A DNA stretch of 64,000 bases from Thalia democratica (GCA_965202585.1 OZ241833.1:24614001-24678000), one strand, 5' to 3'; positions 28,430 to 61,936 are shown, counted from the first letter of the stretch. Numbers and translations are program-made. Notes: generated by a model from the letters alone, not told the origin.

Positions 28430-31400
28430 ATGGCTGCACAAGAAAAAGTAGCTGAAATTTCTGACGATTCGTCGGAGGACGAGTTCAATGAAAACGAAAA
28501 CAACAACAACTCTTCACCGGAACTTTTGCTGGAAAAGAAGGGAATTTTGAGCAAGTGGACGAACTACATACACGGGTGGCAGGTAGCTTGTTTCACTCGA
28601 ATTTTTTTCAGTTTACAACTGAAGCTTTTTGTGTGTTTAAAGTAATAATAAAAGTTGGTATATGTTTTAAGATTGAGAAAAAGCTAGCTGTGTTTTATAG
28701 TTTTGTTAACAACTGAAATATGATGTATAAGCTTTAAGATAGAAAATATTATGTCACTTTAGGCTTGGTCAGTACTTGTTTTATTGGTTCACAGGACAGA
28801 TACGTGTGCTGCACGAATGGGACGCTGTGCTACTACAGGAACGAAGATGAGAGCGAGTACGGTTGCCGCGGAACCATATCCCTGTCCAAAGCGATCGTAC
28901 ACAAGCACGAGTTTGACCCTTGCAGGTTGGTTACTTTTGTTAACTTACTCTGTCATAAAGTGTTTTCAATGTGTAAATAAACACGGTTTACAGCAATTCA
29001 AGATAGTAAGCGTGTACTGTAACAATGGTTTCATATACTAGATCATAGTAGTACTTAAACAATGTTGAAAATTAGTGAATTTTTTCAATATGTAATATAC
29101 TGTTGTTGTTAATCAGTTTTAAAAAGTATTAGTTAATTAGTTTTTGAATCATTTTAATTTGATAAACAGTTTTACTACTATGAAATATTTGTTAAAAAAA
29201 AACTAAGCTCTTTAGAGGATTAAAGTTTCTTAAGTTTACTGTGTTTAAAACTTTTATAAACTAAAGTATTTTTTCAGTTTAAAAAAGCAGTACGTTTATT
29301 TTGACGTCGTATTAGTAATAAAAGTATTTATTTTTTGTAAGAGTTTGTATAAATTAAATAAAAGATACAAAGTTTTTTTTTTTTTTTAATCGATAAAAAA
29401 AAGTATATAAAATATGATTGAAGTGTAAAAGTTTTGATAAATTGTATAATTAGTACAAAGTAGTAAATAGTTATAATATAGAGTTCAATGTAGAAAGTAA
29501 TAGAAGCTTGTTAAACCGTTTAAAATTAATTGTTAAATTGTATACAATAAATGTTATGATTTAAAAAATAATATCTTGGTTATGTTTAACTACGCTGATG
29601 AATTTTTGCTGAAGTTTAAATTTTAAAGTATATTTATCTTTTTTTGATCGAAGTAAAACAAATAGCTAATTTATATATTAAAAGAGATTTTTTTTTACTG
29701 TCTAATTAACCACCTACTTGTAATTAATATTATTTCTTAGCTTTACTCTTTCTTTATCAATATAAGGTTTTGAACTTCTTATTATAATTTTTTATAAAAT
29801 CAATAAAGTTTATTTTTATAAAGAGCTGTATAATTAATTGTGTTACATTAAAAGTTTTTAATTTTTTTTAAGAGACTTATTATAAAAACAATATCAAGTA
29901 TTTTTTTAACGTTTTTTGTTTCTTAGTTTACTGCACCTCAGTAAGCTTCATTCATTTGGGATTTAAAAATACGCATACCTTTATTTATTTTGAGTTGTTT
30001 ACTTGTTTATTTACAGATTGACACCGTTTCGTAATTAAAAACAGCTCTTTTTTACGTATAAAATTGGGTTTGTCTAATGATTAAGTTCATTATATCCATT
30101 TTTTGTAAGATAAAACAAAAGTTAGCTTTAATTTTCTTTTAAATTAATTACAATAGTTTTAGTTTAAAAATAGTCTTATGATTCTTTGTATTTTCTATCA
30201 AAAAACTCAAATAAATTTTAAACTATTCTAAACAACAATTTAATAAAAACAATCATATAAAATATTTCATAACTTGTATAAGTTTGTTGTTATCTCTCGT
30301 TAAAGTTAAATTTACTGTAACAAATATTTATTGTATGTGAAAAACTTAAAAAAATAAATTACAAATTTCTCTATGCTCTTAAGGTTTGGTTACGTATATA
30401 ACAAGGAAATTAAACATGACAGATACTTACAATTAATTTTATGTACTTAAAAGAAAAGGTTACCTTATAAAAATTATGTTAATAAAAGTACACTACTTTC
30501 GTACCATAAAAAGCCAATACTATTCTTAGTACTTAGAATCATGTAAGAGTTATCTATTTTTTAGTTGCTTTTTGCGTTTTTTTAATAAATAAGATAAAAA
30601 TATATCACTTTAAAACTTATATAAGTTTAAAAAACTCTTCACAAAGTTTTATTCTTAGTATAATAAATTTTAAGTAGTTTTTGAAACATATAAAAGCAGT
30701 TTTCAATTAGTTAAAGTTTACTTTAATATTTTGAACTGTTACAAGGTTGAAATGAAACCTGTAAGTTACGAAATTAAAAAAGAAAAGAGGAAAAACCAGG
30801 AATTTCAAACTTTTATTTTACATGTAAAGTAATTTCGAGATTTGGTTTAAATACAAACAGTCTATCGTAAGGTAGAAATATTTTTGTAATATTTGAGTTT
30901 GTTTTTAAATCTTATTTAAGCAGCTTTACAGTATCTTTTCAATATTGTTATATTGGTGTATTAAAAACAGATTTTTTAACTTAAGTTTAGTTTTATCTTA
31001 GAAATGGACCAAAAAACTTGTTTTTTAAAGTTCCGGAAGAAGTTCAAAAAACCTGTTAGAAATTTACAAAAAAAAAAATAGCAGCTATGTTGTTACCACT
31101 TATAATTACTTCCCTCACTTGCAACATTTTCCTTTAGACTAAATAGAATAAGTAATTGATTCATATCTCTGTTTTGAAATAATATTTGAACAAAAATTTA
31201 GAAGAAAATATAAAATACTTGAAGAACTATTGAATATTTAAATCTAGCGCAAGAGATTTAAAACATTTAATTTTAACTTATATAATAAATTTATACTTGA
31301 ACAATATTAGAAAATAAACATATAAATAAACATTATAGATAACCAACATTGTTATTTGCAGTTCACCATTTTATTTTACTTGAAGAGGTCGCAATTTTTT

Positions 31401-34400
31401 GTCACCGAAACCGGGTTGTAAATAAAATATTTAATTTGCACACCTCTATTGAAAATAAACATACAAGAAACACAGTTCTTATACAACTCTACCAGTAGTT
31501 CCTTCACACACAATAGTAAATAAGATGTAAAAATAATATTGAGTTAAAGTTATAGTTGAGTGAAATAAAACTTCACTTCCATTTATCAGAGTTGCCAAAA
31601 AACCTGGAATCCTGGAAAAACCCGGAGTTTGACAATTAACCTGGAATTAGAGAAATTTTGAAAAAAACCTGGAATTTTGAACAGAAATCTCTAAAAAACC
31701 TGGAACTTTGAACTAAAATCACTAAAATACCTGAAAAAACATGGAATTTTAAACAATTTTTACATGTTAGAAAGTAAAATTTTAACTTGACCTGAAAAAT
31801 CTACCATATAAATAAAAAAAAATTTGTCATCATCAATTTTTTTTTAATCAAAAATACATTTAATGTATATTAATAGTATTTTTTTCATTATTGTTATCCT
31901 AATTAACAAAAATTTTAAGCAATATAATACGACGTAATAAACTAGTGTAAATTTAGGATTTAAGAATTAGCTAAATGTAAAGCAAACAAAACACTAGTGT
32001 ACAAAGTAAAAATCAAAGCGTAATATAATCTCCTTTAAAGTGAGACAACATTGTTCGTTGTGTACTAAAAAACAATAGAATCAATTTAAAACAACACTCT
32101 TTATTTATCTAACATAATTCTCAGATTCGATATGGGGATCATAGAAACAAAGTTCATATAAACAATATACGTGCTAATTTGCTATTTTCTTTATGACCAG
32201 TTAAGGTGAGAAAAAATCTGAACTTGTCAAACAGTTCTCAAGATAGCCAACTCTAACAGCGATGCTCACGTGATAATTTAAACTCATTCCTGCTTGAAAA
32301 AAAAACTCAGATGTTGCTCGTTTGTCATCAGAAATGATTTCCAGGTTCGACGTGGCGATCAACGACAGCGTGTGGTACCTGCGAGCCGCCTCCGAGGACG
32401 AGCGCAACCACTGGTGCGAGATCATAGAGGAGAACAAGTCCAAGAGCGGGGAGACCGCCTCGATCAAGCTGCGGCGGCAGGGCTCGCTGATGTCCGTCAA
32501 CAGCAACACGGTGTCCGTCAACTCGTCCGGGTCGGGGCTGCTGAACAGGCAGACCACCCGCATGCTCAAGGAGAAGTTGGCCGAGCTGGACACTTTCAAG
32601 GACATTTTGAACAGCAAGATCGAGAGTTTGCAGAGGTTTGTTTCGGATATTTTAGAGAATAAAGTAAGTTTTGCTGATGTAATATTTTTTGAGTTTTTGG
32701 AAAATGATTTTGTTTTGATTTTTTTACCGAAATTAGATAAAGATGTAAATATTCTTTTATAAACTCAAAAAGTTTTTATACCATCTTATTAAAAGATGTA
32801 CAACAGAAACTATGTTAACGATAGTGAGTTATATTTTTCTTTAAATTGTTATTTTTATCTTTTTTATTTTACTTTCAGAATCTTTGTTAATTAAACCTTC
32901 TAGTAAAATTTTAGTTTTTTTCAAAATGTCTTTGAGATATTTTCATTCTAAATAGTGAATTGTCATGTAAACTTTATAAAAGAGTAATGTGACGATTTTT
33001 TTTCTGTCTTTAAAAGTTCTTTAACGTCTTTTAGTCTATTAGCTAACAGTTTTTAAAGTATACTTATTTTTAGCTTTTTACAATATATGTCAAGATTATT
33101 AATAATTTAAATCTTAAGTTTAAACAGTCACTGTGTTCTTTAAACTAAGTTTTTTTTAGTAAAAGTATAATAAAAACTGACATAAAATTATTATTAGATA
33201 CAATAACTTATATAATAAATATATATTTTTTTATATTACTATTTTCATACCTAATATTAAACATAATGCACATGAATAGTCATCTAACCGATTTTAAGTC
33301 GAACAAAAGTTTAAAACTTTTGTCAGACTTAACTTGTTTTACTTAATCATACAAAAGTTCATTTTTACGATAAGTTTTCAAGTCTTGTTAGCTTTATTTG
33401 TTTTTCAGCTATTAAATATAAAAATATAATAATTTATTCAACTGTAAGAAATAATTATATAAAGCTTTATTTGTCATGACTAAATTCTTGTGCTAATTTA
33501 ATTTTTATTCTAGTTCAAAGTTTAATGTTTGGATGATGTTTTTGTAAAAACTTGATTTTATTCCTTGTTAAAAACTTCCTTGTTAAAAAACATTAATTAA
33601 TATCAAAGTCAGAAACAAATACAAAACTTAATAAATACTAATTAAACTCGCTAAATACTAATTGTGTTTTATGTTTCTGATAAAGTTCTATTTCTTACTG
33701 ATTTGTTTCCCATGAACCATTTGCTAATATTTATGGTATTATTTCAAATGATCATAGATTTTCAGAAAATTTCAAATTTCCTTTTTTTCCATTTTAGCCT
33801 GACTTCCTTATGGCATTTCTTTCTTATTATTAATTTAAAAACTTTTTTTTTTATGTCCAATAGAAGTTTTCTTCGACTTTTAAACAAAGTTAAAGTAAAA
33901 ATGTATTGGGGCTTATTTTTAATGCAAAGGCCCTTCGAAAAAAAGGTCATTTTAGCTTTATTTTTGTTTTTTTCAAAAAAAATAACAAAAAAAATTAAAA
34001 TTTGTTTCTTTAGATTGAATTTTTTATATTATATCTAGGTTCTTTTTTTTTCAAATTTAAATTAAAGATCTAGACAAAAATATTTTTTTTTTTGGCAGCA
34101 CTTATAACAACACTATTTGTTTGCCGAATTATGACTCAAATATTTTATTTGTTTTTTAAATCTTACTATTTAAGGTTTGATTATAAAGTTCTATGTTTTT
34201 TTTTTCTTAGTTTGATGTAGTTTGTTAAATACGTCCCTTAAAAATTTAGCTTTTATATGTGTATATCACTTTTTTCATCCATATTTCTAAAACATTTTTG
34301 CATGTAAAGTAGATTAATTATTTAGAACTAAGTGACATACCAGGGACTAAATACAATAAAATAGTGTTAAAATTTAGTCATTAAGAATAATAATAATAAT

Positions 34401-37400
34401 AATAATAGTTTTCTTTAATAATATTAATATTAAATTTATTTAAACAAAAGCAACATCGTTTCTCCTTACAGGGGTCTTCAGGACTGCAAAATAAAAAATA
34501 AGTAGATGATAACTTAATAAATAGTGCAAACTAATTAATATAATCAAATCTATAAAATTTGAAAAAATCTTTACGTAAGTTTAACATTGTTAAGGTGAAC
34601 AGAAAATAATTAAAATAACAAAAATAAAGTTTTTAAATAGCAATATTTATACTTACAAGCGTTGATATGTTTTATACATTTTAAGATATAGCTTATAACA
34701 ACACAAATCAAAAATGGCTTTTAACAAATAGACCTGCAACTTGGAAAAAAATTGAAATATCACTTGCTGACAAAAAACAAAATTAAATAAAAGACAAGAG
34801 CTTTTTTACACCTGTCCGCACTTTAGAAAATTCTACTTTAAAACTTAGCGTATTTATAGCTGTTAATTTAGTTTTTGCTTGTTAATTTTTAAGGTACCTT
34901 TGTTTGTTAAAAGCCATTTTTGATTTGTGATTAACTATATCTTAAACTGTATAAGACATTTCAACGCTTGTAAGTATAAATATTGCTATTTAAAAACTTT
35001 ATTTTTGTTAATTTAATTATTTTCTGTTCACCTTAACAATGTTAAACTTACGTAATGATTTTTTTTAACTTTATAGATTTGATTATATTAATTATTTTGC
35101 ACTATTTATTAAGTTATCCATCGTCTTAGTTTTTATTTTGCAGGCCTGAAGATTCCTGTAAGGAAACGATGTTGAATTTGTTTAAATAAATTTAACATTA
35201 TTATTGTCTTCGAAATAAGTTTTGTCGAGACCTTTTGTGCTAAAGAAATACCCTTTACATATACCCATTCTTTCTTCTTATTGTTATTAGTTTTTTTTTT
35301 TTTCATATGTTATTTTCTTTCCTTTTATTATTATTATTGTTATTGCTCTTATATATATGTATATTATTTAAATATTATTCTTTTATTTATTATTAATATT
35401 TTAAGTCATTAATTGTTTTAAAAAAATATATATAATTGTTAATATAGTAATATAATTAATAACGAAATAAAAATTAATGATAGTAATAAAAATAATAATA
35501 ACATCAATATCAAAAATAAATGTAATGAAGTATATCAACAATATTCTTAAAAGTTATAAAAAGAAGAAAAATGATAAAAATATCGATATCAACAAAAAGA
35601 CTAGTGTTATTACTTTTTTTTCATATTATTTTAATTTATATCGATCTTTCACACCTGTTTTTAAAGTCACTTTTAATCAACAATTATCCTTATTCAAATC
35701 CCTCAACAAAGTTTCAAAAAATATGCTAAAGAAATATTTTTTTAACAAGAGCAAGCATTTGTTCCAAGAAACATCAAAAACTTTTTATTTGAAAAAATAT
35801 TATTTTGTTCAGATTTTTCGACCGGTGCGCGGACGTGCACGACGGGGAAGTTTCGTCGAAGGGGGATTCCCTCGAAGACAAGATCGTCGGGTCGACGGTG
35901 GTGGACTTCAGGGGGGAGGCGATCACGTTCAAGGCGACCACCAACGGCACCCTCCAGACGCTGCAGCACTGCATAGAGGTGATGCAGCTGAGAGAGGAGA
36001 AGCTGCTGAAGAAGATCGAGAAGGAGAGGGAGCGCAGGAGGCGGTTTGTGACGTCATAAATTCTGTTTTTAAGCGTCGTGATGAGAGACATAAATTACAA
36101 AGTTATTTTAAAAAGTATTGTTCAATTCGACAGCTTTTTAAGTTTTTCTATCAACTAACACTGTAGTACTGTTTTGTTTTATAAACAAACCTTGATTATC
36201 TATACATATGTTTAGTGTGCCTTTTAAAAGACTTACAAGACTTTATACAAAAAAAAATTGTTCTCTGATATCTCTTAGCATTATTTTACACAAAAACACC
36301 ACCAGGCTGATAGAGAAGCACGAGTCGGAGCTGCGTCAGGCGCGCCGGCAAGTTTCGCTGATGGGGAGTCCCGACTTGGAGGAGGGGCCGAACAGCGAGA
36401 TGACGGAGGAGATGTTCTACGAGTGCCTGGAGGCGTACCACGACAAGCAGGACCGCGTGGACGAGGACATGCGGGTGAGCAAGAACCTGCAGAAGAAGGC
36501 CGTCACCGAGAAGCCCAAGGTTGTGACGTCATAATTGTTTTTGAGCGTTTGACGGCTGTTTGCGAATAAACTTCGGAACATGTTTTTTATGCTTATTGTT
36601 TTTAATTTATATTTGTCTTATCATTTTGCTATATTTATACTATTTTGTTTTAGAATGTATAAGCTTAGAATTTTGTAAATAAAAGTATGTCTATAGTGTT
36701 CTTCCCTTTTGAATAGGTTGTAGTTATTTCTATTATTTACTTTTTATCCAGCTCGGATACTCACAGATATTTTTTTTTGAAAATATAGCGAAACTTTGTA
36801 AATTGATATTGTAAGAGTTTTTTCATAAAAAACGCCTAATTTTCTCACTTTTAGAATGTCTCGTCGGAAATTTTTCTTCCAATAAAACTGATTTTAACAT
36901 TTTGCCCAATTATCATTAAGCTCGGAGGTAATTTACATATCGATTAACCATTTTTATAAATTTCACAGTCTTTGAACTAGATTAGTTGTTTTGTCAACTT
37001 ATAAGAAAGTAGAACAAACATTAGTACTTCATATACAATTTGTAATCAGTCTAAATTCACAGCAAAGACACAAGCATTCAGACAAGTTGGAGCAGCGAAT
37101 AAAAGCTCACCTCACTGAAAGCATGGCTCTTCCCAACGAAAACGACGAAAATTCGTGGGAACTTTTCGCTGAAGAAGGTGAACTCAAGGTAAGATACTTT
37201 TCTTTTTTTAATGTTTATCATTGTTCTGCAAAAACAAATATGAAGTGCTTGTTTCAGTTTTTTAATGTACTTTTAGTGCATAAATTTTCAGTTTCTTTAT
37301 TATTATACAGAAAATATGTTTAATTCTAAACAGTAAGGCTATCAACATACACTTTTCGCTAAAACCAAAATTAAAACACAAATGATTACTACAATGTCTA

Positions 37401-38595
37401 CAAGAATAACAAACACTAATCTTAGTATTTCTGGGTATTTGTTTATAGAAATTTCACCAGCCAAATTTCTTTTGTTTTTCAAAGGTGTACCGAAGAGAGC
37501 TGGTCATCGACGACCGGATATGCGACCCGCTGAAGGCAATCCACAGCATCGGACTGGTCACCGCCAGGGAAATGTGCCACTACTTCTGGGACACCTCCTA
37601 CCGGCTGGAGTGGGAAGGCACCATCGACAGTTTCAGGTGACAGTTGTAAATTTTAACCAAAATGGTGAAAATATACCTATTGAGCTGAAGAAGAATCTTA
37701 ATTTTAATGATAAAGTCTGAATTTAATTTTAGTTTTTTAAAGAAATTTCAGACAAGTCTGCTAAAAAAATGATTTCAATTCCAATTTTTTTTGAAAATAT
37801 TTAATTCTTTTAGGGTAATTACAGTAATTAAGTTTTTTTAAACCAACTGCAGGGTGATAGAGGCGCCGGCGGAACTGACCACCATAATATACCAGACCCA
37901 CAAGCGGGTGTGGCCCTCCGCCCAGCGCGACTGCTTGTACGTGTCCAACATGCTCAAAGTTGAGGACCAGCCGATGCCAAAGGACGGCAGGAAGCCCCAC
38001 GACACCTGGATGGTCTGCAACTTCAGTGTGGACCACGAAAAGGTTGGAAAATTTGTTGGATTATAACGGTTTTGCTTTTTTTCGTAGTTTTTAGGTTTGT
38101 TAATCTTTATTTTCACTTTACCAAATTGAATTTACTAAAATTTGATCAGTACTAATATTTATTTTTTTAAGCTATTACTTGTACTATATATTTTTCTCAC
38201 AACTTGCGTCTATTCATATGTATCGCCTATAAAAATATTTCAATAACATATACTGTTATCAAAAATTATAATGTAACTTCCCGGTTTAAAATAAACCTTA
38301 TCAAAATATTGCAACTAAATATCACCACCAGGCGGAGCCGGTGGGCGGTTGCTGCCGCGCCGAATGCGACATCGCGCTCATCTGCCAGACGTACGTCGCA
38401 GCGCCACCCGACGGAGAGAAGGTGAGCCGGCGGGACCTGAGGTGCGACATCGTGTACGTGGCGGAGGTGAACCCGGGAGGGTGGGCGCCCGCCTCCGTCC
38501 TCCGGACCATCTACAAGCGGGAGTACCCCAAGTTCCTGCGCAAGTTCACCGCCTACGTGCAGGAGAAGACCAAGGACAAGGAGATATGGTTTTAA
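28430..38595 (+). CDS. CERT1: Ceramide transfer protein (PH - middle region/FFAT - START domain), 9 exons, 583 aa
   Basis: Exons: 28430-28582, 28795-28925, 32345-32635, 35813-36043, 36306-36519, 37063-37188, 37485-37636, 37853-38042, 38332-38595 (1752 nt). Motifs: [16 protein letters not shown]; [13 protein letters not shown]; NDSVWYLRA; LRRQGSLMS serine-rich motif; [13 protein letters not shown]; [11 protein letters not shown]; [17 protein letters not shown]; [37 protein letters not shown]. Confidence 0.97.
31587..31800 (+). repeat. hAT-like single end with tandem AAAACCTGGAA subterminal repeats, CERT intron 2
   Basis: Starts cagagttgcca, followed by 6-7 (A)AACC(T/C)GGA copies. No matching right end found. 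Confidence 0.55.
34425..35200. repeat. Long inverted repeat (foldback) in CERT intron 3
   Basis: Arms of about 300 bp (about 34425-34735 and 34900-35200): ttaacattgttaaggtgaacagaaaataatt pairs with aattattttctgttcaccttaacaatgttaa, and tatacttacaagcgttg pairs with caacgcttgtaagtata. Spacer about 165 bp. Confidence 0.9.
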
Positions 38596-42114: not shown

Positions 42115-44139
42115 TTTTAAAGTTTGCATAAGTTACCACTTTTAATATAATGTGTGTGTAAAACATTTTCTAAAGTTTGCATTTGCATAGTTCACTGAAA
42201 ATCTGATCAAGCATAATACCATATAAAAATTAAATGGAATTAAACATGTGTAACCAACCTAAGTATTATTTATTTTTTCAATTTATATTAAAATATATGA
42301 ATTTAAGTTTTTTCTGTTTAAGCCTTTTTAAACTTGTAGAAATTTAAAAAACGAAGGGCCAATCATAAACTTTGAGTAGCTACTGAGTTTTCAAATAAAA
42401 ATATACATCATATCGTATGAGGTGTTAATATTAATAAAAATATTTAAAAAAAAATTTAGCACACTTTCAAAAATACTGCATGTTAAACTTTAAGTAATCA
42501 AAAGGCTAGTAGATAATATAAGTATTAAGGTGTTATACTAAAAAATTAACATTTTTATGCTTTTTTTAAATAAAATAGTTTATCTAGTTTTAAGCAATAA
42601 AAGAGGCAATAATTTTTACTACAAGTATGTAACATAAAAAAAATATATGCATCAAATGATAAGCTAGGTGAAATTTATAAAGTACAAAAGTATACATAAA
42701 TACGTTAAGGGTTTCACTATTATTTAATTGCTTTTTTTACTCAAAAAGTCAACTAATATTATAGAGTTGCTAGTTTCTTGACACCTATACAAACAAAGGT
42801 ACTTGCTAATTTAGATATTCTGATTGTCATAGGATTCCAAAATCAAAGTGTATGAATTAACGTGATTTAATTAATAACAAACTAAATTCAATAATTAGCA
42901 ATAAGTTCTCGGTTAGGAAGATTAAAAAATAATTAGGTTTATAGAGACTATTGCACTACTGAGTTTCCATGCTACGCAATTATACATAGGTAAAAAGTAT
43001 GTGCTAAATAACAATAATTGCAACAATAATTTGTAAGCAGTAGAACTTTTTTACAAATGATTAAGATCTTAGCTCTGAAACTCAGTAATTTAATAGTCTG
43101 AGCAAACACCATTTATTATTTATGTAGTTTTCAACAAGTCGTATAAAAATTTAAATTTATATACCTTTAATTAACTGAAATTACAATAACCGTAATGGCA
43201 CACATAATAACTTTTTAATTGGCCGGTCCTGGTCTAAGAATAAACCGTAATTAAATAAATCATTTTCTAAAACTTTTTTTAAGACTTATAAACAAATAAA
43301 AACTTCAAGTTTTTCTGAAACAAGTATATTAAGAGTTGATATTGGATACTTAACGAAAGATGAAAAAACTGTTTTTCTCACTACTTGATTATTGTAACAA
43401 AGTATGAAATTTAAAGTTGTAATATAACATTTTTTTATGTATAAGTAGTCAATGAATATTAAAATAAGAAGGTGAAAGAACATTTTAAATAAATTTATGT
43501 AACCAGCCGAATCAAAGATCCTAACAAATAAAGTTTTAACAAATCCCGAAACTAGAACAAGTTTAAAGCTTTTTTAATAATATTCAAACTTTAAAATATT
43601 TGAATATGATTATTCATTTCCTATATATATGAATTTTCAGATAAGAATAGCAAAACAAAATCCTTACAATTTAAGTTTTATAATAAAAAAAAAGAATTTT
43701 ATTAACTTTAAATTTTTCGATACTTATAAAAACAATCAAGTACTACAAGTTTTTAAAATACTCAATATATGAACAGCTCAATATGAGTATAAATAAGTAT
43801 ATACTTTTTAGTCTCTTCTTATCAAACTAACAAAAAAAAAATTGCTTAAAATATCAAAAAATTTAAGATGTCCTAAGTTTTTTAATAACTCTATTACGTT
43901 TTGTGTTAAAAGTTTATTTTTTCTCGTTAGGTTATAAAAACTTAGTCTTTTTTAATATCGATGAGAACTTAGTTAGCAAATTGACTCGTTAAATAGTAGT
44001 TTTTATTAAAACAATATGTGCAAATTTTCAATTTAGTTTATTTGTTTATCATATTGTGTTTAACTTTGTGTTTTCATATAAATTATGTTTGTATATCTAT
44101 ATATAATTTATCTTAAAGTTTTGAATATAAGTTTATTTT

Positions 44140-44420: not shown

Positions 44421-45643
44421 GAAGTTTTTTGAATATTAATTTTATAATTTTTAGAATAAGAAAAAGTTCAGTTTTTAATCAACTGATAGATTAAATATTC
44501 TAAAAGTCATCAACATTTCATTTTAATTTTTAGTTATTATGATTGTACTGATCTTATGTATATATTTTTTTTAAATCATCTTATTGTAATAGAGCTCTGA
44601 ATATGTTCAACAACTATTCTAAATAAAATTGTTAAGTACAAAAGCTTTAAACTTTGTTTAGTAGACCATAATTTGAACTTAAAGGTTTTTTTACCCTGTT
44701 TTCTTAAAAAGCTTTTCAATAAGTAAGTATCTTTCTAATACTTTTCTTATAATCTTTTAATAAAAATAAATTGGTCTATCGTGTATACATACATACATGG
44801 TTATGATAAAAATATTTGTATCAAATATTAAGCAGCAAACTATGCAATGGAATTCGCGTGAATTCTTTAACCTATATAGAATGTTGTAAAACGTGCACTG
44901 CGGTTAGGAAAGTTATTGGTCAGCATATTTTTTTTGCTGCAAAAATACGAGAAGATTTCAAAATCGGATTTATTTTTGTATCTTTGTGTTGTTTCTCAGT
45001 CCTTTTCTTACAGTAATTGCTTCTTTTATAGTGTTTGTCAATAAGTCGGTAACTGGTGTATAACATTTCTAAACTAACTAAATTACTTTTTAAACGTTAG
45101 TGTCATAAATAAAGATAAACGATATTTTTGGTGTAGTAGTTTATTCTAAAAAAGTTAGACAATATTATTTTGATTATAATTCACTACTTCAAATTCAATA
45201 TCATTTTTTTATTAATTAAGTCAAAAAATATATTTTTTTAATTAAATTGATTTTAGTAATTTTTTGTGAAAATAAATTTTAGTACAACTTTTATGCACTA
45301 AATTTTTAAAAATACAAGTAAATATGTTTTTTACTTCTTTATAGCGTTAAATGCTTAAAAATGTTTACTAAAACATCAACTTAAACCCAAAGTTTACGTA
45401 AAAATTTTGAATATATTTTTCTTCGTACAGAAGTTATTTTTCACTCGTTTACAATAAATTCTTACACATGCTGTCTCAATCGGATCTTTTCTTTCTGTAA
45501 AAATATTTGCATAAGAAAAAGATTAAACGTTGCCAACATTAAACAATACAGTTACAAAGTTTGTTTAATTATCGATATGAAGAACATTCATAAGTTGAAT
45601 GGCATAATTTAAAATATTTGAGAGCTACCAAACCCATATAATC

Positions 45644-48600
45644 TCACAATAGTAGTGTGTTCAACTCACGCAAAGTGTTGCAGTGGTTCGGCTTGTACTT
45701 GGTCCTCAAACAAACACGCTGCCTCCATTTGTTGAAACCACCGGCAACCTTACCAAAGTATTCATCTTTGTTCTTTCTGCAGTGGTCTGGCGGTAGAGGA
45801 GAGTAAGTCCTCTGAAACGTAGTTTGATGCTTTACAAAACTTTTATTGTTTCTTTGAATCCATGAAACATGACTTTAAGTAAATAAAAAGAAACAACATT
45901 TAATTATTTTATATATTTACTCACTCCACCACTGCTGACAACTTGGCCGCTACCAGGTATCAGATCGATTATTTTCTCGAAAACGGGGCATTTTTCCGGG
46001 TTGCAAGACTTTGCATACTCTTCGTCGGTCAAAAACTCGTACTTACAATCTCTTTCTTGCTGTTTATTGGTTAAAATATTTTTTTGTTTTGTATTAGTGG
46101 TACACTTTTCAGTGACCCAGTTAATTCAACAGTTTCAATGTAAGTATCTTTCAGCAAAAAAAATAATTTTTATAGTTGATATTTTTACTGGCATATGTGA
46201 TATATTAATAACAAAATAAAATTAATAATAAAAAAACTAAACCAAAAATAAATATTGTTTTCTTAACAAGTTTAGCTTTCAGTAAAAAGGAGTTTAGCTT
46301 TCGATAGCTTATATAAACTAAAATCAGCATATTGGCACAAGAATTATTTATTTCTATGAAAATAATAAAAAGTTTAGATGTAAAGAATTAAGTAGCTTTA
46401 TACCTAAACTGGTGTGTTGTTATTTACATACAATACTCAGTTCAAACTTGACAAAATATAAATTAGTAGTGCATTTACAAACAACTATCAGCCTATAGTT
46501 TTAGAAACACTTTAAAATATTCTTTTTAATATGAAACTCACGTTGAAACAACTGCGCTCGTACTCAGAAAGAGCTGTAAACAAAAATAAAGTTAGTAAAC
46601 AAAAAGTCTAAAGTTATTTAATTATAATTGTGAAACTTAACACTTTTTAGCAGTACAAACTTTTTTTTTCAAATAAGTTTTCGTTTTGCACAAAAAAACC
46701 TCAAAAATTTTATTTTGCAAAGTTTTACTAGTGTATAGTTTCATTTGAACAAAAATATTTTTACTTGGTACATATTTCAAGTTAAAAAGTTGGAAATGGT
46801 CTCCTGAAAACAAAAGTGACTTAATTACAATTTTTTCTTTCTTAAAGTAGCATAGCAGATTTTTAAGCACTCACCGTAATAATCGAAAGTGGTGTCGGAC
46901 AAGTCGGCATCATCAAAGTTTTCGAAAGTGAGCAAGTAGATTGAAGACACGTAAGTCAGTTTCTTGTCGCTGTACGACTTGAAGTTGATTCCGTCACTTT
47001 TTTTAATCATCGCCAAATCGAAATCAGTTGCGTTGTCGACGTTTAGAATGTTCTCACCTGTATGAAAACATTAAATAAGTAATACGAGCTTTATAAAAGT
47101 TCATAAAAGTTTTATACTAAGCCGAAGCAATCATCAGAAAAAAAATTCTTCGTGATAAAATAATTAAACTTTAGTTTAATGTGATGCTTTGAAACATAAA
47201 ATACTTAAGCAAATTTTACTAAGTTATTTTAAATATCTATAACAAGATATACCGCAGATGCTTTTGTGTCAAAACTTTATTCTGACTAACGGCGTTTCAC
47301 TGCTCTCAAATAACTTTATTAACAGCTTAGCTTATCAGGATCTCTAGGATTTAACGCCTTTTAACATTACATCTTATAACAAGATATACTAAGTACAAAA
47401 TTCATACTTTTTTTTCATGGATTAAAAAATGTTTGTTAAAACAAGAATTTTTCAAACAAGTGGTTAAAATATATCAAGCAAAAACATGCGTTTGAAACGT
47501 CACAAAAACCTGTCACGAAGTCAGCCAGCTCGACGTTCACCCCTTCCGGGACGTTTTTCAAAAAAACAGCGGTGAGGCTCGTGTGCTGCCTGGACGAACC
47601 CTCGTAAATTCTCGGCACGAACACCGAACACGAGGACTGGACGCTCAGAGACGCGGGGTAACCTTGCAGCTCCGTCACCAGGTCGCAGCCGGCTGTTTTG
47701 AAAAAAAAAACATATTACGAAATTTCATAAATCAAAAAACAAGTTTTGTACCTATGTAGTTGACGGTGAACGGCGTGCTACTCTGCATGAGGTAGGCGAC
47801 TCGAAGCGCCTTTACGGCGACGACCTTGTCCTCATTGCCACGCACCACGTCGAACAAGGCGGAGTCGTAGCCGTTGGTGCTGACGTAGATGGCAGCAGCG
47901 AAGCGTGCGTCCTAAAACGTCAACTTTAGTGATAAAAAACAATGTTGCTTTCGGCCTGTTTTGCCACTTCATAATGTCTTTAAAAGTCATATAAGATTCT
48001 AAAAAATTGTAATTTAGAATTATAGAAGTAAGTTTCTACCAGCCTGACGACTGATTTGTCGTGTTTAAAGTATAGTTTATAAAGGTAAAACAAGAAATTT
48101 AGTAGTTTTTCGCTATTATTACTCTTTTTAACCACGGGTAAAGATAAATATAAAATATCTGTACTCAATTTTTTTTTAATTTTTGTGTTAGTTTTACTTA
48201 AGAACTTAAAATATTTTTAAAGTGTTTAAGCATCTTATATATTAATGAAAGCAACAAAAATTTAAAGAACTTATATAAAACGTTTTTATTAAGTCATTTG
48301 AAAAATTACTACTGCATAACAATCTTTTAAATTTAAACAGTTAGTAAAATAATGTTTGGTACTTTAAGTAGGCAACAAAAAAAGGTTTTATGCATGGGAT
48401 CTCTAACAAATGGTCCACACATTGTTTTGACGTGACCCAACATCAATTAAAAAAAAACTGTGAAGGTTAAAACACTTAAATACTTCTGTCTAGACTAGTT
48501 AATTATGCATAAACTACTTTCAATATATATTTTTTTAATTTCATTAATACGTCATGTGTTTTAAATACTCACTACTTTCTAAAGATTTTTTAGGACCACT

Positions 48601-50057
48601 TAAATACTTATGCTTGCAACGCTGCCCATTAAAATTGGACATTCTTAATTATTATCTTTACATTTAAAATAAAATACTTAAAATCACCTGTATATCAGAA
48701 AATTTTAAAACAATAGTTTCATATTGGCTTCTTTTTATTTCTTTATAATATCCATTGAATGTTCTACTCATTGATTCTTCATTGAAATATCCTCTATTGG
48801 ACACACAAACACGCTGTGAACATTCTTCTACTGTTTACGTATTTTGATTATGTTAATATAATAATAAATATAATTAATAATATTTTTTTGTTTTAAATGT
48901 TATAAATCTTCACAAAAAGTTTTTTAGTTTTTATTTAATTAAAATGTTACAGAAAGTATAGTTATTTTTTAAAGCTCTATAATAATAAATTACTAAAAAA
49001 AAGTTTTTTTTAACTACTTATATAACAATATTACAAAATACAAAGCCATAACAAAATATACTTTTACAAACTATAAAAAACCACTAAAACCTTTTAAATT
49101 TGTCAAAATATTTATTTTTCTATTTCTTCAAAAGTTTCTTCATAAATACAACAAAGAATTTTTTGTGAAAAGACGTACCGTAGTTTAATGTTATACATAA
49201 AAAAAAACATATTAAAGTACACTGCTTGAAATTTTATAACAAAAACCTTAAAACTTTAAATACAACAACAAAAAATCAAACTCTTTAAGCAATTGGTGTA
49301 AAATTTTAATTTTTTTTAGACATATCTATTTTTAAAATTTAACAGTAATAATTTCTACCAACAACAATACAGTAAAAAGTTATGACAAAATAAATAACAA
49401 AAACTATAAATGTAACGTTCTAAACATAATGTTCATACAAAAACTAATCAATAAAAATTTGATTTACTCTTTTCAACCGTGTACTACAAAGCCGTTATTA
49501 CTGTTAGATTATATAAAGAAACATGATAAAATGTTTTTCTACACCAAATAAGTTCTAGCTTTAGAAAAGCTGTTGATTTCGACAGTCATTAGCGGTCGAA
49601 GTAATGTAATTTTATCGCACTTAAAGTAGAACAAACTTATCATATAAACTTTATTTGATAATTTTTAAAACAAAAATTTAAAATAAACTAAAAATTTTCC
49701 TCTTTTAGCTTACTTATTAAACAATTTCAAACTAAGTATCTTAAACACAGGTCTAATAATAGCAAGAATTAACTTGTAACCTTTTTAGAATATATAAAAC
49801 CATTTAAAATATACGTGGTAGATAATATCTTAGAAATTTTGTTAACCTGTTTTCGATTAGCTAAGTTTAGAAATAAATTAATTACTACCTCCAAAGCTAC
49901 TAAGAATTTCTGTAAGTAAACTTTACCAATGTCAAGTTTAAAATTGCTTACAGAAAAAAAAAACTAAAAGTTCTGAGATAGAAAATTTCTAACCTTCGTT
50001 TGAAGAAAACACTTCGTTTACTAAAGCAAATACGAACAGTGAAACCAGCAACTTCAT
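45644..50057 (-). CDS. Uncharacterised secreted protein of about 352-355 aa: signal peptide, two probable divergent CUB-like domains, Cys-rich C-terminus
   Basis: Exons: 50057-49994, 48830-48688, 47911-47752, 47692-47510, 47057-46875, 46573-46542, 46059-45925, and 45811-45644 (stop), or 45811-45670 spliced to 44936-44920. All frame-consistent GT-AG. Signal peptide MKLLVSLFVFALVNEVFS. CUB-like strand pattern (TIVLKFSDI, IYVSTNG, LRVAYL, PFTVNY; AGC, CSVFV, LTAVF, INFKS) with phase-1 introns at module boundaries. The gene model is firm; the domain call is inference. Confidence 0.8.
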
Positions 50058-57363: not shown

Positions 57364-60300
57364 CTATTCACTGTCCTCGCTGGAAGAACTGTATGCGTAC
57401 CCCACTAAAGACGTGGCTGCTTTACCAACTTTCTGCTCATCATTTTTGTTTTCAGCAACTCCAGTCTCTTCATTTTTGCTTTTAACTTCCTTCTCTTCTG
57501 TCTTGTTGTTACTGCTTGCTTCTTTGGAAGTGCTGACATTGGCCACCTTCTTTTTGATGCCAAGTTTTTTAATACCAAGCTTTTTTCGGAGTGGGGCGGA
57601 ACTTTGCTGTAATAAAATTTGTGAATGTTAGTTTTGTTGTTTCTGAAAACTTAATATAAAAGTTAAACTGTACTTAATAACTAGTAATGGCAATTAAAAT
57701 TATGAAACATGGAGCTTCCGGTTGTTACAATTTTTATTATGCTTTTTTATTGTAAACATTTTTTACAATTTCAATAAAATTAAATTGTTTAAAAACAAAA
57801 TGAAAGTAATATTTTCCAAAATTATTAAAAATTAATCAAAAAATTTGTTAAGATGTAGTTTTCTGCTTACATAGTTTTTTCAAAAATGTTAAAATATGTA
57901 TTGTTATTTTAGCTGAAACATGAACTATGACTAAAACATATTTATATTTAAATTAAAGTAATTACCTTTGAATTTCCTTGACCTAAAATGTCGTTCTTTA
58001 GGCCCATTTTCTTTTCAAGGCGCTTATAAACATCTGTTAAGTCGTTGTGGTCTTTTATTTCTGGAATTCTTTTACATTTGATGCGTCTAAAAAATGAAAT
58101 TTATATAACATATGTTTAAATAAAACTTCGATCTCTTTATTATGTTTACTAATTAAGTTTAAGCAAAAATTAACTTTTAAACTCAAACATATTACAGGAA
58201 CAAATTTTTGCACAATAAAGCTTTAGTATACTGTTCATTTAAAACTTAAAGCTTTTTAAGTGCCTAAATAAATATATGATTATTATATAACTTATTTAAA
58301 TAAAAATGTTGTTATAAAATTTCCTTTTAGCTCTATTTGTTATTAACAAAGCACAAACACGCAAATACAATATTTTATTAACTAAAATACACGCACTAAA
58401 TTCCTTAGCTAGTATTAAAAAAATACTTCACAAAAAATATTTGTTAAAATTCCAACATTATATTTACAATATTAAATCAAATGATCAATAAAACTAAATT
58501 CCCAACAACTTCAACATAAAGTGACCAATAGTAATAGATTAAAAATATTAATTATTTAAAAATTAATACAAAAAAACAAACTTTATTTCCTCGTCGATTT
58601 CCGCTTCCTCCCGCTTCTTCCTCTCCTCGTCGGTCTCCTTGTGGATCTTCATCCTCTTTGTGAGCACCTCGTCGATGTGCAGCTGCGCCTTCTGATCGTT
58701 CATCTCCTTCAGATCCTCCAAAGCCTCCATCATCTCCATCTCCCTCTTAGAGTCCTTCGTCCTCTTCTCCAACATCTGAAATTATTATTCATATGCTATA
58801 ATATATTCAGTGCTAGAGGCCTTGGGTTCAAGTTTTGTTTATAGTCAGTGTTCTCAACATTTATCAGCTACTACGAAAGTCTAACAAACGCTGAGTTATC
58901 TGAGTGTTAAAGATTTGAAAGTAAATATGAAGCAGGCTCTCCTAAGAAAAATGAAAAACGTTGTTCATAAAAAAGCGGTTCTAGTTATACGAATAAAAGT
59001 GAAACAAGTTGTATGGATAAAAGTTAAGCCGGTTACTCAAATGAAAGCTGAACCAGTTGTTCAAATAATGTGAAGCCAGTCGTTCGAATGAAAGTGAAAC
59101 CAGTTTTGGAGTGAAGCCATCTGTTCGGGTGAAGTTGAAGTAGGATATTGTTGTTCTCTTTTCGGAAGCACCGGAATTATAAATTTTGTGTTATATTTTT
59201 TGGTGTTTTTATGTTAATTTTTAAAACTTTAATTAGTTAAACTCAGTTTTTTTTCATTTTTAATGTACAATCTTGGTTTATTTTTGTCTTTTTGTTGTAT
59301 GTCTTTCTGTATAAGTGGCCTAGGTTTTGATGCCTGGGTCCTTCATATGACAATAAACTTACAATAATATGATAAAAATATCTAACACATTTCTTAACAG
59401 GTTTAATGTTCATACAGCAGTTTGTTTTGGTTTTTATTTACTTTTTGCATTGCGTTTTAAAAAGTAATCTTGGTAATTCAGCAAAGTTTGATGAGGAGTG
59501 ATTTTTTGTACAGTCTTTGTTGAAACAAATATCTAACCTTAATTTCAAAAATGAAAAATAGAAAATGAAGCATATTATTACTAGATTAAACTTCATACTT
59601 GAAAAATCAAATAAAAGACGTGAAAAAAATTTACTTTCATCGGATTGGATTCTTCTTCTTCTCGTTTCTCTTTTTCCTTCTTCTCCTGTTCATCGACCAG
59701 CCTCTGAGCTTCGAAGTTCCTCGTCGCTCCGTGCTCTATCGCGTAATCCTGATTCTCCGGATCCGTCTGAAATAAATAAGCTTAAATTACCAAGTATTTC
59801 AAATGTGTAATCTTATTTTTGTGTTGAACTTTATAGATTGCTACAAGTTATTACCTCTATCTAAAAAAACAGTTTTTAACTAGTCTAGAAAAAAGGTTTT
59901 GGAGTTTGAAATCAACAATCATTGAAGTTTGTTAAGTATTTAATTTTTTATCTAACTTCATAACACATTTCTACCAATATTAACCCCTCTTAAGACTTCA
60001 TTGATTAGTTCTGAAGAAAAAGAAATTTCCAAGTAAAATTAAAACTGCGTATTTAGTCATGTCAGTAACAACAAACCAGGAAAGTGATTTCAGCAACGCA
60101 TCTGGTGCACTTGATGTAGAATCGGTAAATTCTCAACCCGAGGTAGTCCTTGTCCTGGACCGTCTCCATTCTCGAGTTGAACTTGGTCCCTTTGTAAATG
60201 TAGTTTCCACACGTCTTGCATCTGTTTGTTGATAAAAAATAAAAAGTGAGAATGTTTCACTACTATACTGTTCAGTAAAAAGTACTCGAGAACAGTTTTT

Positions 60301-61936
60301 TTTTATGCAACATAATAGTTTAAAAAGAATTACTAAGCTATGCTATTTCAAAAAAAAGAGATATATAAACTTTTTCATATATACACTCTTGAACAAAATT
60401 ATTGATAACTGACATAAAATTTGTTTAAATAGGTAAATAATTTACTTTTAGAAGTTGGTTAGATAGTTTTTAATTAATCATAACGCTTTTTTCTAGCAAC
60501 AAATACAAAAAAAAACATATTGTGTATAAATATTTGTACAGTTTTGTACAGTTTTTTTTATTGGTTACTGGGCAGACCTTTTAAAATTTACTTTTATAAT
60601 TTAGCCAACAAATTGAATATAATTTTTTACTTTTTACCAAAAAATAACATAAGTAAAATTTTTCTTTAAGTATAAAAAATTTTCAATGAATTAGAGACTG
60701 ACTCAATTAAATCTTTAAATTTATGATAAATTGATATATGTTTCTTAGGATTATAAATTAGTTGTAACTAAAACTTGCAAAACAATACTTAAATGTTTTT
60801 AATTGAAAATATTAAAAATATTTGATAACAAAAATTAAAGCATTTCTAAAAAGACAAAAAGTTTACTCAGTTTTTTTTACTATCTCAGCGAATTTCAAAT
60901 ATAAACTAAGGTTTTGATGCTTTCATTTTAACTGAGACAAAAAATTAAGAACATATTTTTATTTTATTGAAGTAAGCTTCTGACAAAGTATTTGCCTACA
61001 TGCAATGTATTTTAAATCAAAAGGTTATAGTAAAATTAATATATTCTCACCCTCAACCATTTATTTCTTATAAGTTACTTTCAATTTTTTTTTTTGTTTC
61101 TTATCATTTCTGTGAAAATATTCAAGCTAAAAGTTAATGCTGGAGCAGAATTTTTACAATTGAAATATTAATACAAGTTAAACTTTAAAATAAGTTTTTT
61201 TTAAGCTTCAAACTTAAAAATACATCAACAAATTTATGTTTGTTTTAAACCTTTAGTTTAAAGATTGGGGAGCTTTTATCTTCATTTTTCAGTAATTTCT
61301 AGAGATTTGAAAAACTAAAAGTATACTTATTCTAATGTAGGGTTTTAAAAGTCAAGCAAAAAATCTGTCGAAATACTGTCTCCTGCTATGTAGTTTAAAA
61401 ATGTATACATTAAAAAACTTTTTAGGACACTTAAAAGAAAAACTAAACAGCAACATGTAAAAAGTTATCAAAATAATTACACATTTATTTTATTTTTACT
61501 TTATAGAACATAAAAATAAACTTATTAGCTTATTATTTAAGTGGTAAATTCTTAGTGTTTATTTAGTTTGAGAAAAGCATATAAATAAAGAAACATTTGT
61601 AGTACAACATAAATGTATACAATAAACTTATCTAAAGAAGCATATTAAGCTTAAAAAACTTTGTAGTTTAAAATATTTTCATATTGATAAACTTTTCAAA
61701 AAATACGTGCATATTTTAAGCATGCAAAAATTTAGATTTACACATTAAATCTATAGCTAAAAAGTAATTATGAACATTTTAAATAATATATGATGAATTT
61801 TAGCATAACAATGTTGAACTTAATTAAGTACAAACCTCATGTGAAAAGGAGCCATAGTTCGAATGGTGTACTGCCTGTCTTTTGCTTGGCGTTTTCTTGG
61901 TATTTTTGAAGGATCATAGTCGGGTGGGTAGTATTT
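57364..61936 (-). CDS. YJU2: Splicing factor YJU2 (CCDC94), 5'-partial; the short first exon was not found
   Basis: Exons: 61936-61836, 60221-60077, 59766-59635, 58775-58582, 58086-57966, 57606-57364 (311 aa). Motifs: [13 protein letters not shown]; [22 protein letters not shown]; [14 protein letters not shown]; [20 protein letters not shown]; [17 protein letters not shown]; acidic tail [15 protein letters not shown]. Confidence 0.95.
58985..59140 (+). repeat. Degenerate ~24-bp tandem repeat (GAATGAAAGTGAAGCCAGTTGTTC-like), about 6 units, in a YJU2 intron
   Basis: Recurring aaagtgaa(a/g)c(c/a)agtt units. Confidence 0.65.
59290..59345 (+). mobile_element. Probable LINE/SINE 3' tail with stem-loop, antisense in a YJU2 intron
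   Basis: taagtggcctaggttttgatgcctgggtcc is homologous to 44166-44195. Confidence 0.55.

What the first reader, a model, noticed from the sequence alone, without database searches (positions are those of the whole stretch)
47752..48830. Exon-by-exon switching of synonymous GC content inside single genes
Hand counts of codons ending in G/C: in the secreted-protein gene, exon 48830-48688 has 8/47 (about 17%) while the next exon 47911-47752, about 780 bp away and of similar length, has 43/53 (about 81%). LGR exon 6343-6414 has 4/23, whereas LGR exon 7966-8436 is visibly GC-rich. CERT exon 36306-36519 reaches 66/71 (about 93%). Introns fall back to AT-rich within tens of bases. Exons of one mRNA share the same tRNA pool and expression level, so translational selection cannot explain this, and isochore-scale effects would also raise intron GC. 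Inference: an exon-local mechanism, such as GC-based exon definition, exon-restricted biased gene conversion or repair, or chromatin protection, acting on only some exons.
Basis: partly seen in the sequence, partly recalled or inferred. Interest (0 to 1): 0.72.

Follow-up and report, generated by a model that had tools for sequence, protein, structure and literature searches.

The report
Exon-by-exon GC mosaic in salp genes
In this very AT-rich marine animal genome, neighbouring coding pieces of one gene really do switch between A/T-ending and G/C-ending codons; the switch tracks exon length and stops at intron borders and stop codons, so some exon-local force, not yet identified, is at work.

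Summary
In the secreted-protein gene (minus strand, 9 GT-AG exons), exon 48830-48688 has GC3 8/47 and exon 47911-47752 has 43/53 (Fisher p=1e-10). CERT exon 36306-36519 has 66/71 and LGR exon 6343-6414 has 4/23.

A same-species cDNA from a marine metatranscriptome maps onto all nine exons, so the low-GC and high-GC exons sit in one mRNA and the scaffold is not chimeric.

At least 13 other windows of this genome carry the same first-reader note, so the scan has seen this before on other DNA. My extra sample (7 CCT chaperonin genes, 30 kinase loci) shows it elsewhere too.

The genome (802 Mb, about 25% GC) fits Thalia democratica. A 2026 paper reports that species' gene-level gap between CDS and genome GC, but not an exon mosaic.

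- GC3 rises with exon length (rho 0.83).
- It changes in steps at introns.
- It ends within about 10 nt of splice sites and at the stop codon; UTRs in cDNAs are 18-35% GC.
- It affects all codon families alike.
- It differs among equally expressed CCT subunits (0.26-0.74).
- It is shared by close relatives but not by distant homologues.

The mechanism is unresolved. I favour selection for a non-intron-like coding composition (0.35), ahead of exon-restricted biased gene conversion and codon-level selection.

The parts
49994..50057 (-). Secreted-protein gene, exon 1 (ATG, signal peptide), GC3 .43
   Evidence: covered by cDNA L137
48688..48830 (-). Secreted-protein gene, exon 2, 143 nt, GC3 .17 (8/47), CpG o/e .39
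   Evidence: cDNA L137 block 48687-48832; conserved in P0001, L136 and L001
47752..47911 (-). Secreted-protein gene, exon 3, 160 nt, GC3 .81 (43/53), CpG o/e 1.36
47510..47692 (-). Secreted-protein gene, exon 4, 183 nt, GC3 .77; separated from exon 3 by an AT-rich 59-nt intron
46875..47057 (-). Secreted-protein gene, exon 5, GC3 .61
46542..46573 (-). Secreted-protein gene, exon 6 (32 nt), GC3 .55-.60
45925..46059 (-). Secreted-protein gene, exon 7, GC3 .47
45670..45811 (-). Secreted-protein gene, exon 8, GC3 .60. If its donor is not used, the frame runs on to a stop at 45644 (alternative 3' end)
   Evidence: L136 appears to carry the read-through form
45394..45494 (-). Secreted-protein gene, exon 9 coding part, GC3 .27; the 3' UTR continues to at least 45359
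28430..28582 (+). CERT exon 1, 153 nt, GC3 .57
28795..28925 (+). CERT exon 2 (PH domain), GC3 .74
   Evidence: Pfam PH
32345..32635 (+). CERT exon 3, 291 nt, GC3 .95
35813..36043 (+). CERT exon 4, GC3 .91; its intron starts with GTTTGTGACGTCA
36306..36519 (+). CERT exon 5, GC3 .93 (66/71); its intron starts with GTTGTGACGTCA
37063..37188 (+). CERT exon 6, 126 nt, GC3 .48: the low exon inside the START-domain region
   Evidence: best PDB hit is the human CERT START domain at the expected position, E=.044
37485..37636 (+). CERT exon 7, GC3 .84
37853..38042 (+). CERT exon 8, GC3 .86
   Evidence: Pfam START
38332..38595 (+). CERT exon 9 coding part, GC3 .90; the sequence turns AT-rich directly after the TAA stop
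6343..6414 (+). LGR leucine-rich-repeat exon, 72 nt, GC3 4/23
   Evidence: Borders AG/GT, open in frame 2. The resemblance to an LRR of glycoprotein-hormone receptors is judged by eye from my own knowledge; Pfam gave no hit
7913..8446 (+).
   Evidence: Pfam 7tm_1
61836..61936 (-). YJU2/CCDC94-like gene, exon (101 nt), GC3 .39
   Evidence: the gene name rests on my own recognition of the protein sequence
60077..60221 (-). YJU2-like exon, GC3 .73
59635..59766 (-). YJU2-like exon, GC3 .57
58582..58775 (-). YJU2-like exon, 194 nt, GC3 .86

Best explanation
Shown: the mosaic is a real, heritable, genome-wide property of coding DNA in this roughly 25% GC genome. Background mutation drives unconstrained DNA to about 22% GC. 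A force favouring G/C acts on third codon positions of some coding blocks, raising them to 80-95% GC3, and leaves other blocks at the background level of about 20%. The blocks are usually whole exons. The longer the exon, the more likely it is GC-rich. The effect ends at splice sites, start codons and stop codons.

Inferred, and my preferred mechanism: selection on pre-mRNA composition. In a genome whose introns are extremely A/U-rich, coding sequence that looks like intron is at risk of being cut. The risk is cryptic splicing, premature cleavage and polyadenylation, or failure of exon recognition. Long exons and functionally important coding stretches are therefore kept G/C-rich. Short exons held between two real splice sites, first exons and UTRs can stay A/T-rich.
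For: 1. The borders are step-like on both sides. Exon GC is flat up to the last 10 nt, and introns are at baseline from +11 and -11.
2. GC3 rises with exon length. Window exons: rho=.83, p=2e-6, n=22; gene-centred .68. Independent CCT exons, gene-centred: rho=.63, p=2e-5. Means are .36.49.62 and .78 for exons of <=100, 100-150, 150-200 and 200-300 nt.
3. Introns uncouple neighbouring coding windows: r=.34 across introns against r=.78 within exons, p=.0025.
4. First exons and the first 40 codons are mostly low, and UTRs in real cDNAs are 18-35% GC.
5. The shift is 'G/C as such'. Every codon family moves 10-40 fold, including the NCG codons. T>C and A>G move equally. Four-fold sites go from A.35 C.09 G.09 T.47 to A.08 C.36 G.48 T.08.
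6. It does not follow expression: TRiC subunits range from .26 to .74.
7. It does not follow protein position. The same protein region has GC3 about .8 here and .23-.31 in distant homologues.
8. The bias is ongoing. In the three-copy gene L021/L022/L023, polarised third-position changes give an equilibrium GC3 near .66, against .23 in the gene's own flanks.
9. Polyadenylation-like hexamers are about 25 times rarer per kb in GC-rich than in AT-rich coding segments.
10. There is precedent from plants. A/U-rich introns against G/C-richer exons guide plant splicing (my own knowledge), and introns mark step changes in GC3 (PMC4684703).
Against: 1. Apparently intronless kinase ORFs can be GC-rich, with GC3 peaking over the catalytic core and falling in disordered linkers. 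They need no exon definition, so only the 'avoid cryptic processing' half of the idea covers them.
2. CCT theta has exons of about 140-210 nt (alignment lengths) yet GC3 of .17-.30.
3. There is no relation to flanking intron length.
4. In the window, weak GTT-type donors go with GC-rich exons (p=.02). This was not replicated in the CCT genes.
5. No splice-site or poly(A) motif is avoided beyond what the codon composition already gives.
6. Synonymous first positions barely follow: Arg AGR>CGR odds ratio 1.1-1.9, Leu TTG>CTG 5.5, against 10-40 at third positions.
7. Stop codons also tend toward TGA/TAG in GC-rich genes.
8. No RNA-processing data were available.
Confidence: 0.35

Rival explanations
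1. Exon-restricted GC-biased gene conversion or repair. Allelic heteroduplex can form and persist only in indel-free, well-conserved stretches. In this very heterozygous genome those stretches are the coding blocks. Biased mismatch repair therefore enriches G/C there, more so in longer blocks, at a strength set by the local recombination rate.
For: - The G/C shift is strand-symmetric and the same in all codon families, including CpG codons.
- Stop codons tend toward TGA.
- Amino-acid composition and GC1/GC2 shift with GC3 in window exons (rho .54).
- It fits the exon-length dependence and the uncoupling by introns.
- It fits the locus-specific levels among TRiC subunits.
- GC3 is low in disordered regions, which I take to tolerate indels (my own knowledge), and high in conserved domains, with little effect at the single-site level.
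- There is a small but significant leak into flanking introns (rho .58.27 against .23).
- In a likely haplotig pair there are 0 indels in 891 bp of CDS against 15 indel events in about 2.1 kb of flanks.
- There is an ongoing W>S bias relative to the flanks.
Against: - Conversion tracts should carry the bias tens to hundreds of bases into introns and UTRs. Instead GC is at baseline from 11 nt on and shows no decay with distance. A 59-nt intron between two GC-rich exons is AT-rich.
- Synonymous first positions of Arg and Leu should shift like third positions, and they do not.
- Internal exons show no edge effect.
- I know of no precedent for conversion limited in this way.
Confidence: 0.25
2. 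Selection at the level of translation (codon optimality, accuracy, co-translational folding, a 5' ramp). It is made very visible by a huge population size and a strong A/T mutation bias, and its strength varies along the mRNA.
For: - The effect is confined to the reading frame: it stops at start and stop codons, and UTRs are AT-rich.
- It is largely specific to third positions; Arg and Leu first positions hardly move.
- GC3 is low in the first 40 codons and in disordered regions and high over catalytic cores. Similar, much weaker patterns are known from other organisms (my own knowledge).
Against: - Equally expressed TRiC subunits differ from .26 to .74.
- Dependence on exon length and steps at introns have no place in a mature-mRNA model.
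- The same protein region is GC-rich here and AT-rich in distant homologues.
- The effect of conservation at single sites is small.73 against .77.
- All G/C endings rise alike, including NCG.
- Exon 2, at GC3 .17, sits next to exon 3 at .81 in one constitutive mRNA. Exon 2 is 143 nt, so skipping it would shift the frame.
Confidence: 0.15
3. Chromatin-linked mutation bias. Nucleosomes positioned on exons, or exon-targeted mismatch repair, protect G:C pairs from decay. Exons shorter than one nucleosome are not protected.
For: - In the window, mean GC3 is .50 for exons under 150 nt and .82 for exons of 150 nt or more.
- GC3 tends to be lower in 5' exons than in later ones, as known exon and gene-body chromatin marks would predict (my own knowledge).
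- The distribution of segments is bimodal, which could reflect a self-reinforcing state.
Against: - Chromatin cannot resolve borders to 10 nt or stop at a stop codon.
- Protection alone cannot raise GC3 to .9 against a 3-4 fold A/T mutation bias.
- W>S changes are raised as well as S>W changes lowered.
- Arg and Leu first positions do not follow.
Confidence: 0.08
4. Artefact: the AT-rich 'exons' are mis-called intron sequence, or the scaffold joins unrelated DNA.
Against: - Same-species cDNA L137 covers all nine exons at the predicted borders.
- cDNAs from three relatives agree.
- CERT exon 6 aligns to the human CERT START domain.
- The same pattern appears in CCT genes on five other chromosomes.
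Confidence: 0.01

Closest known systems
Step changes of GC3 at introns in plant genes (Ressayre et al. 2015, PMC4684703, read)
   Same: [quoted passage not shown] Exons behave as units.
   Different: In plants the first coding regions are the GC-rich ones and internal regions are held within a narrow range. Here 5' exons are mostly AT-rich and internal exons range from .17 to .95. Exon length is the main correlate, and the organism is an animal.
Differential exon/intron GC content and exon definition in vertebrates (Amit et al. 2012, my own knowledge; Warnecke, Parmley and Hurst 2008, PMC2374712, listed)
   Same: GC-richer exons lie in AT-rich introns, with a proposed role in exon recognition.
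   Different: In vertebrates the contrast goes with long introns and is modest. Here there is no relation to intron length, the contrast reaches 95% against 22%, only some exons show it, and it excludes UTRs.
GC-biased gene conversion as the driver of GC3 variation in animals (e.g. birds, PMC4290106, listed; honeybee, my own knowledge)
   Same: A W>S bias that acts alike on all codon families, differs between loci and is still ongoing.
   Different: Classical gBGC raises flanking intron GC together with GC3. Here the flanks move by only 4 percentage points.
Gene-level GC statistics of Thalia democratica (PMC13746493)
   Same: A 790.7 Mb genome with 25.3% GC, CDS GC about 17 points above the genome, and a broad GC3 distribution. 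This fits the present genome (801.8 Mb; window 25.8% GC). The identification is my inference.
   Different: That paper works per gene and per species. It does not report exon-by-exon switching, exon-length dependence or confinement to the CDS, and it leaves the cause open.
Splicing-dependent codon usage in human genes (Mordstein et al. 2020, PMC7181179, listed)
   Same: GC content of coding sequence depends on exon position and on whether the gene is spliced.
   Different: In humans the first exons and intronless genes are the GC-rich ones. Here first exons are mostly AT-rich, and most of the sampled apparently intronless kinase genes are AT-rich too.

Membership tests
Classical GC-biased gene conversion (regional) | GC3 rises together with the GC of flanking introns and UTRs | tested here: not met
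   Flank GC is .27 against .23, baseline is reached from 11 nt, and UTRs in cDNAs are .18-.35.
Classical GC-biased gene conversion (regional) | W>S fixation bias that is alike in all codon families and on both strands | tested here: met
   Codon table; polarised changes (small sample).
Classical GC-biased gene conversion (regional) | Correlation with local recombination rate | not testable with these tools
Translational selection on codon usage | Confined to the translated frame | tested here: met
Translational selection on codon usage | Strength follows expression, so co-expressed subunits are alike | tested here: not met
   TRiC subunits range from .26 to .74.
Translational selection on codon usage | Independent of intron positions and exon length | tested here: not met
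Translational selection on codon usage | Preferred codons match the tRNA pool | not testable with these tools
Compositional exon definition / differential exon-intron GC | Sharp GC contrast exactly at both splice sites | tested here: met
Compositional exon definition / differential exon-intron GC | Contrast linked to long flanking introns or weak splice sites | tested here: inconclusive
   No link to intron length. The weak-donor link has p=.02 in the window and was not replicated in CCT genes.
Compositional exon definition / differential exon-intron GC | Applies to exons as RNA-processing units, not to unspliced genes | tested here: not met
   GC-rich and mosaic apparently intronless ORFs.
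Intron-structured GC steps (plants) | Step changes of GC3 at introns | tested here: met
Intron-structured GC steps (plants) | GC-rich first coding region, decreasing from 5' to 3' | tested here: not met
   5' exons and the first 40 codons are mostly low.
Methylation-driven CpG decay (bimodal CpG o/e) | CpG depletion with TpG/CpA excess in one class of sequence | tested here: met
   Low-GC3 coding has CpG o/e .57, TG 1.24 and CA 1.16. High-GC3 coding has 1.03 and introns .72. This cannot by itself move non-CpG sites, and any W>S bias would also produce it.

The most novel reading that the evidence does not exclude
Biased gene conversion that is confined to coding blocks because, between very divergent haplotypes, only indel-free constrained DNA can form stable heteroduplex. 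Base composition would then record, exon by exon, how long each 'homology island' is. This would be a new way for a neutral DNA-level process to follow reading-frame borders.
Probability: 0.22. Interest if true: 0.85.

Novelty: new variant of a known kind. Interest (0 to 1): 0.6.

Why it matters
Whether synonymous GC content is set by selection or by biased gene conversion is a long-standing dispute. It is hard to settle because in most animals GC3 and flanking non-coding GC move together.

Here the two are uncoupled to an extreme degree. Adjacent exons of one mRNA differ from 17% to 95% GC3, while the introns and UTRs between them stay near 22%. The state of each exon is predictable in part from its length.

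That makes this genome a natural experiment. Allele-frequency spectra, a conversion map and splicing assays on a few recoded exons could separate the hypotheses.

There is also a practical side. Gene finders trained on GC-rich exons will probably miss the AT-rich short exons of this genome.

Tried and rejected
- **RNA reads.** I replaced it with metatranscriptome cDNAs.
- **Wider genome sample.** The genome-wide sample is therefore limited to 60 loci, which favour long exons and two protein families.
- **Pfam on the secreted-protein exons.** No family found; the protein's function stays unknown.
- **CERT relatives in metagenome contigs.** Only distant animals turned up, no salp orthologue. I used them only for a conservation profile. 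CERT's two lowest exons are among its least conserved (.27.28), but exon 5 is just as poorly conserved (.28) and has GC3 .93.
- **Site-level accuracy test on kinases.** Conservation of the individual residue has little effect (.73 against .77). Position inside or outside the domain matters more (.53 outside).
- **Alternative-exon idea for exon 2.** Rejected: exon 2 is 143 nt, so skipping it would shift the frame, and it is present in the cDNAs.
- **Intron length.** No relation.
- **Donor strength.** Suggestive in the window, not replicated in CCT genes.
- **Avoidance of splice or poly(A) motifs beyond composition.** None found.
- **TGACGTCA in GC-rich coding.** 4 observed against 0.9 expected. 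The counts are too small to build on.
- **Paralogue check.** The genome holds only this one copy of the secreted-protein gene.
Full report
**What is there.** The window is 25.8% GC, with short GC-rich islands that coincide with coding exons.

I rebuilt the focal gene on the minus strand as nine exons with AG/GT borders. Together they give one open frame of 380 aa beginning with a signal peptide. GC3 per exon is .43.17.81.77.61.55.47.60.27.

- Exon 48830-48688: 8/47.
- Exon 47911-47752: 43/53 (Fisher p=1e-10).
- CERT exon 36306-36519: 66/71.
- LGR exon 6343-6414: 4/23 (sequence).

CERT assembles into a 583-aa frame from nine exons with GC3 .57.74.95.91.93.48.84.86.90. Pfam finds PH and START pieces in it. 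The low exon 6 aligns to the human CERT START domain at the right place.

Instead I searched exon 3 against protein representatives. That found a 375-aa homologue encoded on an intronless metatranscriptome contig. A family search gave four more cDNAs.

One of them, L137, is 98% identical in nucleotides to the spliced window gene. It maps to the genome in nine blocks whose ends match my exon coordinates within a few bases.

**How general is it?** Earlier notes of this scan report the same mosaic in at least 13 other windows of this genome.

The genome is 801.8 Mb. Its size and GC fit Thalia democratica: 790.7 Mb and 25.3% GC, the lowest of 38 tunicates, with CDS GC about 17 points above the genome (PMC13746493). 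The identification is my inference. That paper works per gene and does not describe exon-level switching.

Seven CCT genes, which I identified against solved TRiC structures, have per-exon GC3 from .16 to .89. CCT beta reads .75.22.53.73.73.79.38.81, while CCT theta is uniformly .17-.30.

Over 252 coding segments, the distribution has modes at .2-.3 and .8-.9 (bimodality coefficient .63). The sample favours kinases and long exons.

**Anatomy of the effect.**

1. *Borders.* GC inside GC-rich exons is flat to the last 10 nt. Introns are at 22-29% from +11 and -11. The mean GC of 100-nt intron flanks is .27 next to GC-rich exons and .23 next to the others. This is a small leak, but it correlates with exon GC3 (rho .58).
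2. *Coding only.* CERT turns AT-rich directly after its stop codon. GC-rich intronless ORFs fall to about .2-.3 within 30-60 nt of the start and stop codons. In real cDNAs the UTRs are 18-35% GC, including a 697-nt 3' UTR at 22%.
3. *Exon length.*
   - Window exons: rho=.83 (p=2e-6); gene-centred .68.
   - Independent CCT exons, gene-centred.63 (p=2e-5).
   - Bin means.36.49.62 and .78.
   - Length is not sufficient. Exon 2 (143 nt) is .17, and many 1-1.5 kb kinase ORFs are .23-.30.
4. *Introns are break points.* Adjacent 25-codon windows differ by .106 within exons, which is the noise level (r=.78). Across introns they differ by .20 (r=.34; p=.0025).
5. *Long single ORFs also vary, but smoothly.* GC3 peaks over the kinase catalytic core and falls in disordered linkers and N-termini. 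The conservation of the individual residue matters little.
6. *Codon pattern.*
   - Every G/C-ending codon rises 10-40 fold, NCG codons included.
   - T>C and A>G rise equally.
   - Arg AGR>CGR does not move, and Leu TTG>CTG moves only 5.5-fold.
   - Stop codons are TGA or TAG in 9 of 10 GC-rich ORFs against 7 of 18 AT-rich ones. Counting independent gene families, that is 6/7 against 7/18 (p=.07).
   - CpG o/e is 1.03 in GC-rich coding.57 in AT-rich coding and .72 in introns.
7. *Evolution.* Per-exon GC3 closely matches in a same-species cDNA and in the relative L136. It correlates at r=.92 with the relative L001, which is 78% identical in protein. In homologues of 52-54% identity the exon 3/4 region has GC3 of only .23-.31. 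The genome has no paralogue of this gene, so these come from other species. In a three-copy gene, polarised third-position changes imply an equilibrium GC3 near .66, against .23 in the gene's own flanks. The bias is therefore active now (small counts).

**What this excludes.**
- Isochore-like or classical gBGC effects fail on points 1 and 2.
- Expression-linked translational selection fails on the TRiC comparison and on points 3, 4 and 7. Points 2 and 6 (third-position specificity) keep a codon-level component alive.
- Chromatin protection cannot give 10-nt borders or a GC3 of .9.
- Methylation decay alone cannot move non-CpG sites.

**Best explanation and its rivals.** I favour selection that keeps long or important coding sequence from resembling the extremely A/U-rich introns (confidence .35). 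This covers exon recognition and the avoidance of cryptic splicing and polyadenylation.

It explains the two-sided sharp contrast, the length dependence, the exemption of first exons and UTRs, the 'G/C as such' pattern and the independence from expression. Polyadenylation-like hexamers are about 25 times rarer in GC-rich coding.

It is weakened by several findings:
- CCT theta is AT-rich throughout.
- There is no link to intron length.
- The weak-donor association was not replicated.
- No motif is avoided beyond composition.

The main rival is conversion limited to indel-free coding islands (.25). A likely haplotig pair shows 0 indels in 891 bp of CDS and 15 in about 2.1 kb of flanks. This rival fits the locus effect, the domain-against-linker pattern and the small leak. 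It does not fit the absence of any decay into introns or the behaviour of Arg and Leu first positions.

**Verdict.** It is a new and extreme animal variant of known exon/intron composition effects.

Noticed in passing
window 36044-36060, 36520-36536, 47497-47509; CCT loci: Many introns begin with GTT rather than GTA or GTG. About a quarter of the 38 donors I mapped read GTTTGT. Three introns begin with a GTT(T)..GTGACGT motif; the two in CERT contain the full TGACGTCA palindrome. T at donor position +3 is rare in most eukaryotes, so the U1 snRNA 5' end of this species would be worth reading.
   Followed up: partly
window 45644-45669 and 45394-45494: The secreted-protein gene has two 3' ends. 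Either exon 8 is spliced to an AT-rich exon 9, as in cDNAs L137 and L001, or the donor is not used and the frame stops 9 codons later. The relative's cDNA L136 appears to carry the unspliced form.
   Followed up: partly
G000 C8:12.3-17.8 Mb and 53.5-53.8 Mb; C6:13.4-13.7 Mb: There are large tandem arrays of apparently intronless protein-kinase genes, dozens of them holding the whole kinase domain in one open frame. The kinase ORFs I could read were mostly AT-rich at third positions; none of these came from the arrays themselves. This fits the high duplication rate reported for Thalia democratica.
   Followed up: no
L014/L015 (C2:23.29 and 23.36 Mb), L021/L022/L023 (C5:62.6, C792, C5:62.7): Duplicated kinase genes have coding regions far more alike (2-3% different) than most of their flanks (12-31% mismatches in four of five flanks, with many indels). 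This suggests homogenisation of the coding part only, strong constraint on it, or duplication borders close to the gene.
   Followed up: partly
window 4678-4894, 13381-13550, 41935-42153: Non-coding GC-richer islands (42-48% GC) whose translations share similar repeated patterns. They look like copies of a short interspersed element. They are not exons of the genes studied.
   Followed up: no
window 52051-52317 and 62577-62971: Transposon-like open frames: a weak CENP-B/Tigger-type DNA-binding hit, and a frame that looks like a reverse transcriptase by eye. Their GC3 is .27-.39, so these mobile-element coding sequences do not share the GC enrichment.
   Followed up: no
L062 (metagenome contig Ga0210059_1012431): A 606-aa open frame on a 12.9 kb contig from another organism, 69% identical to the last exon of the window's CERT.
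   Followed up: no
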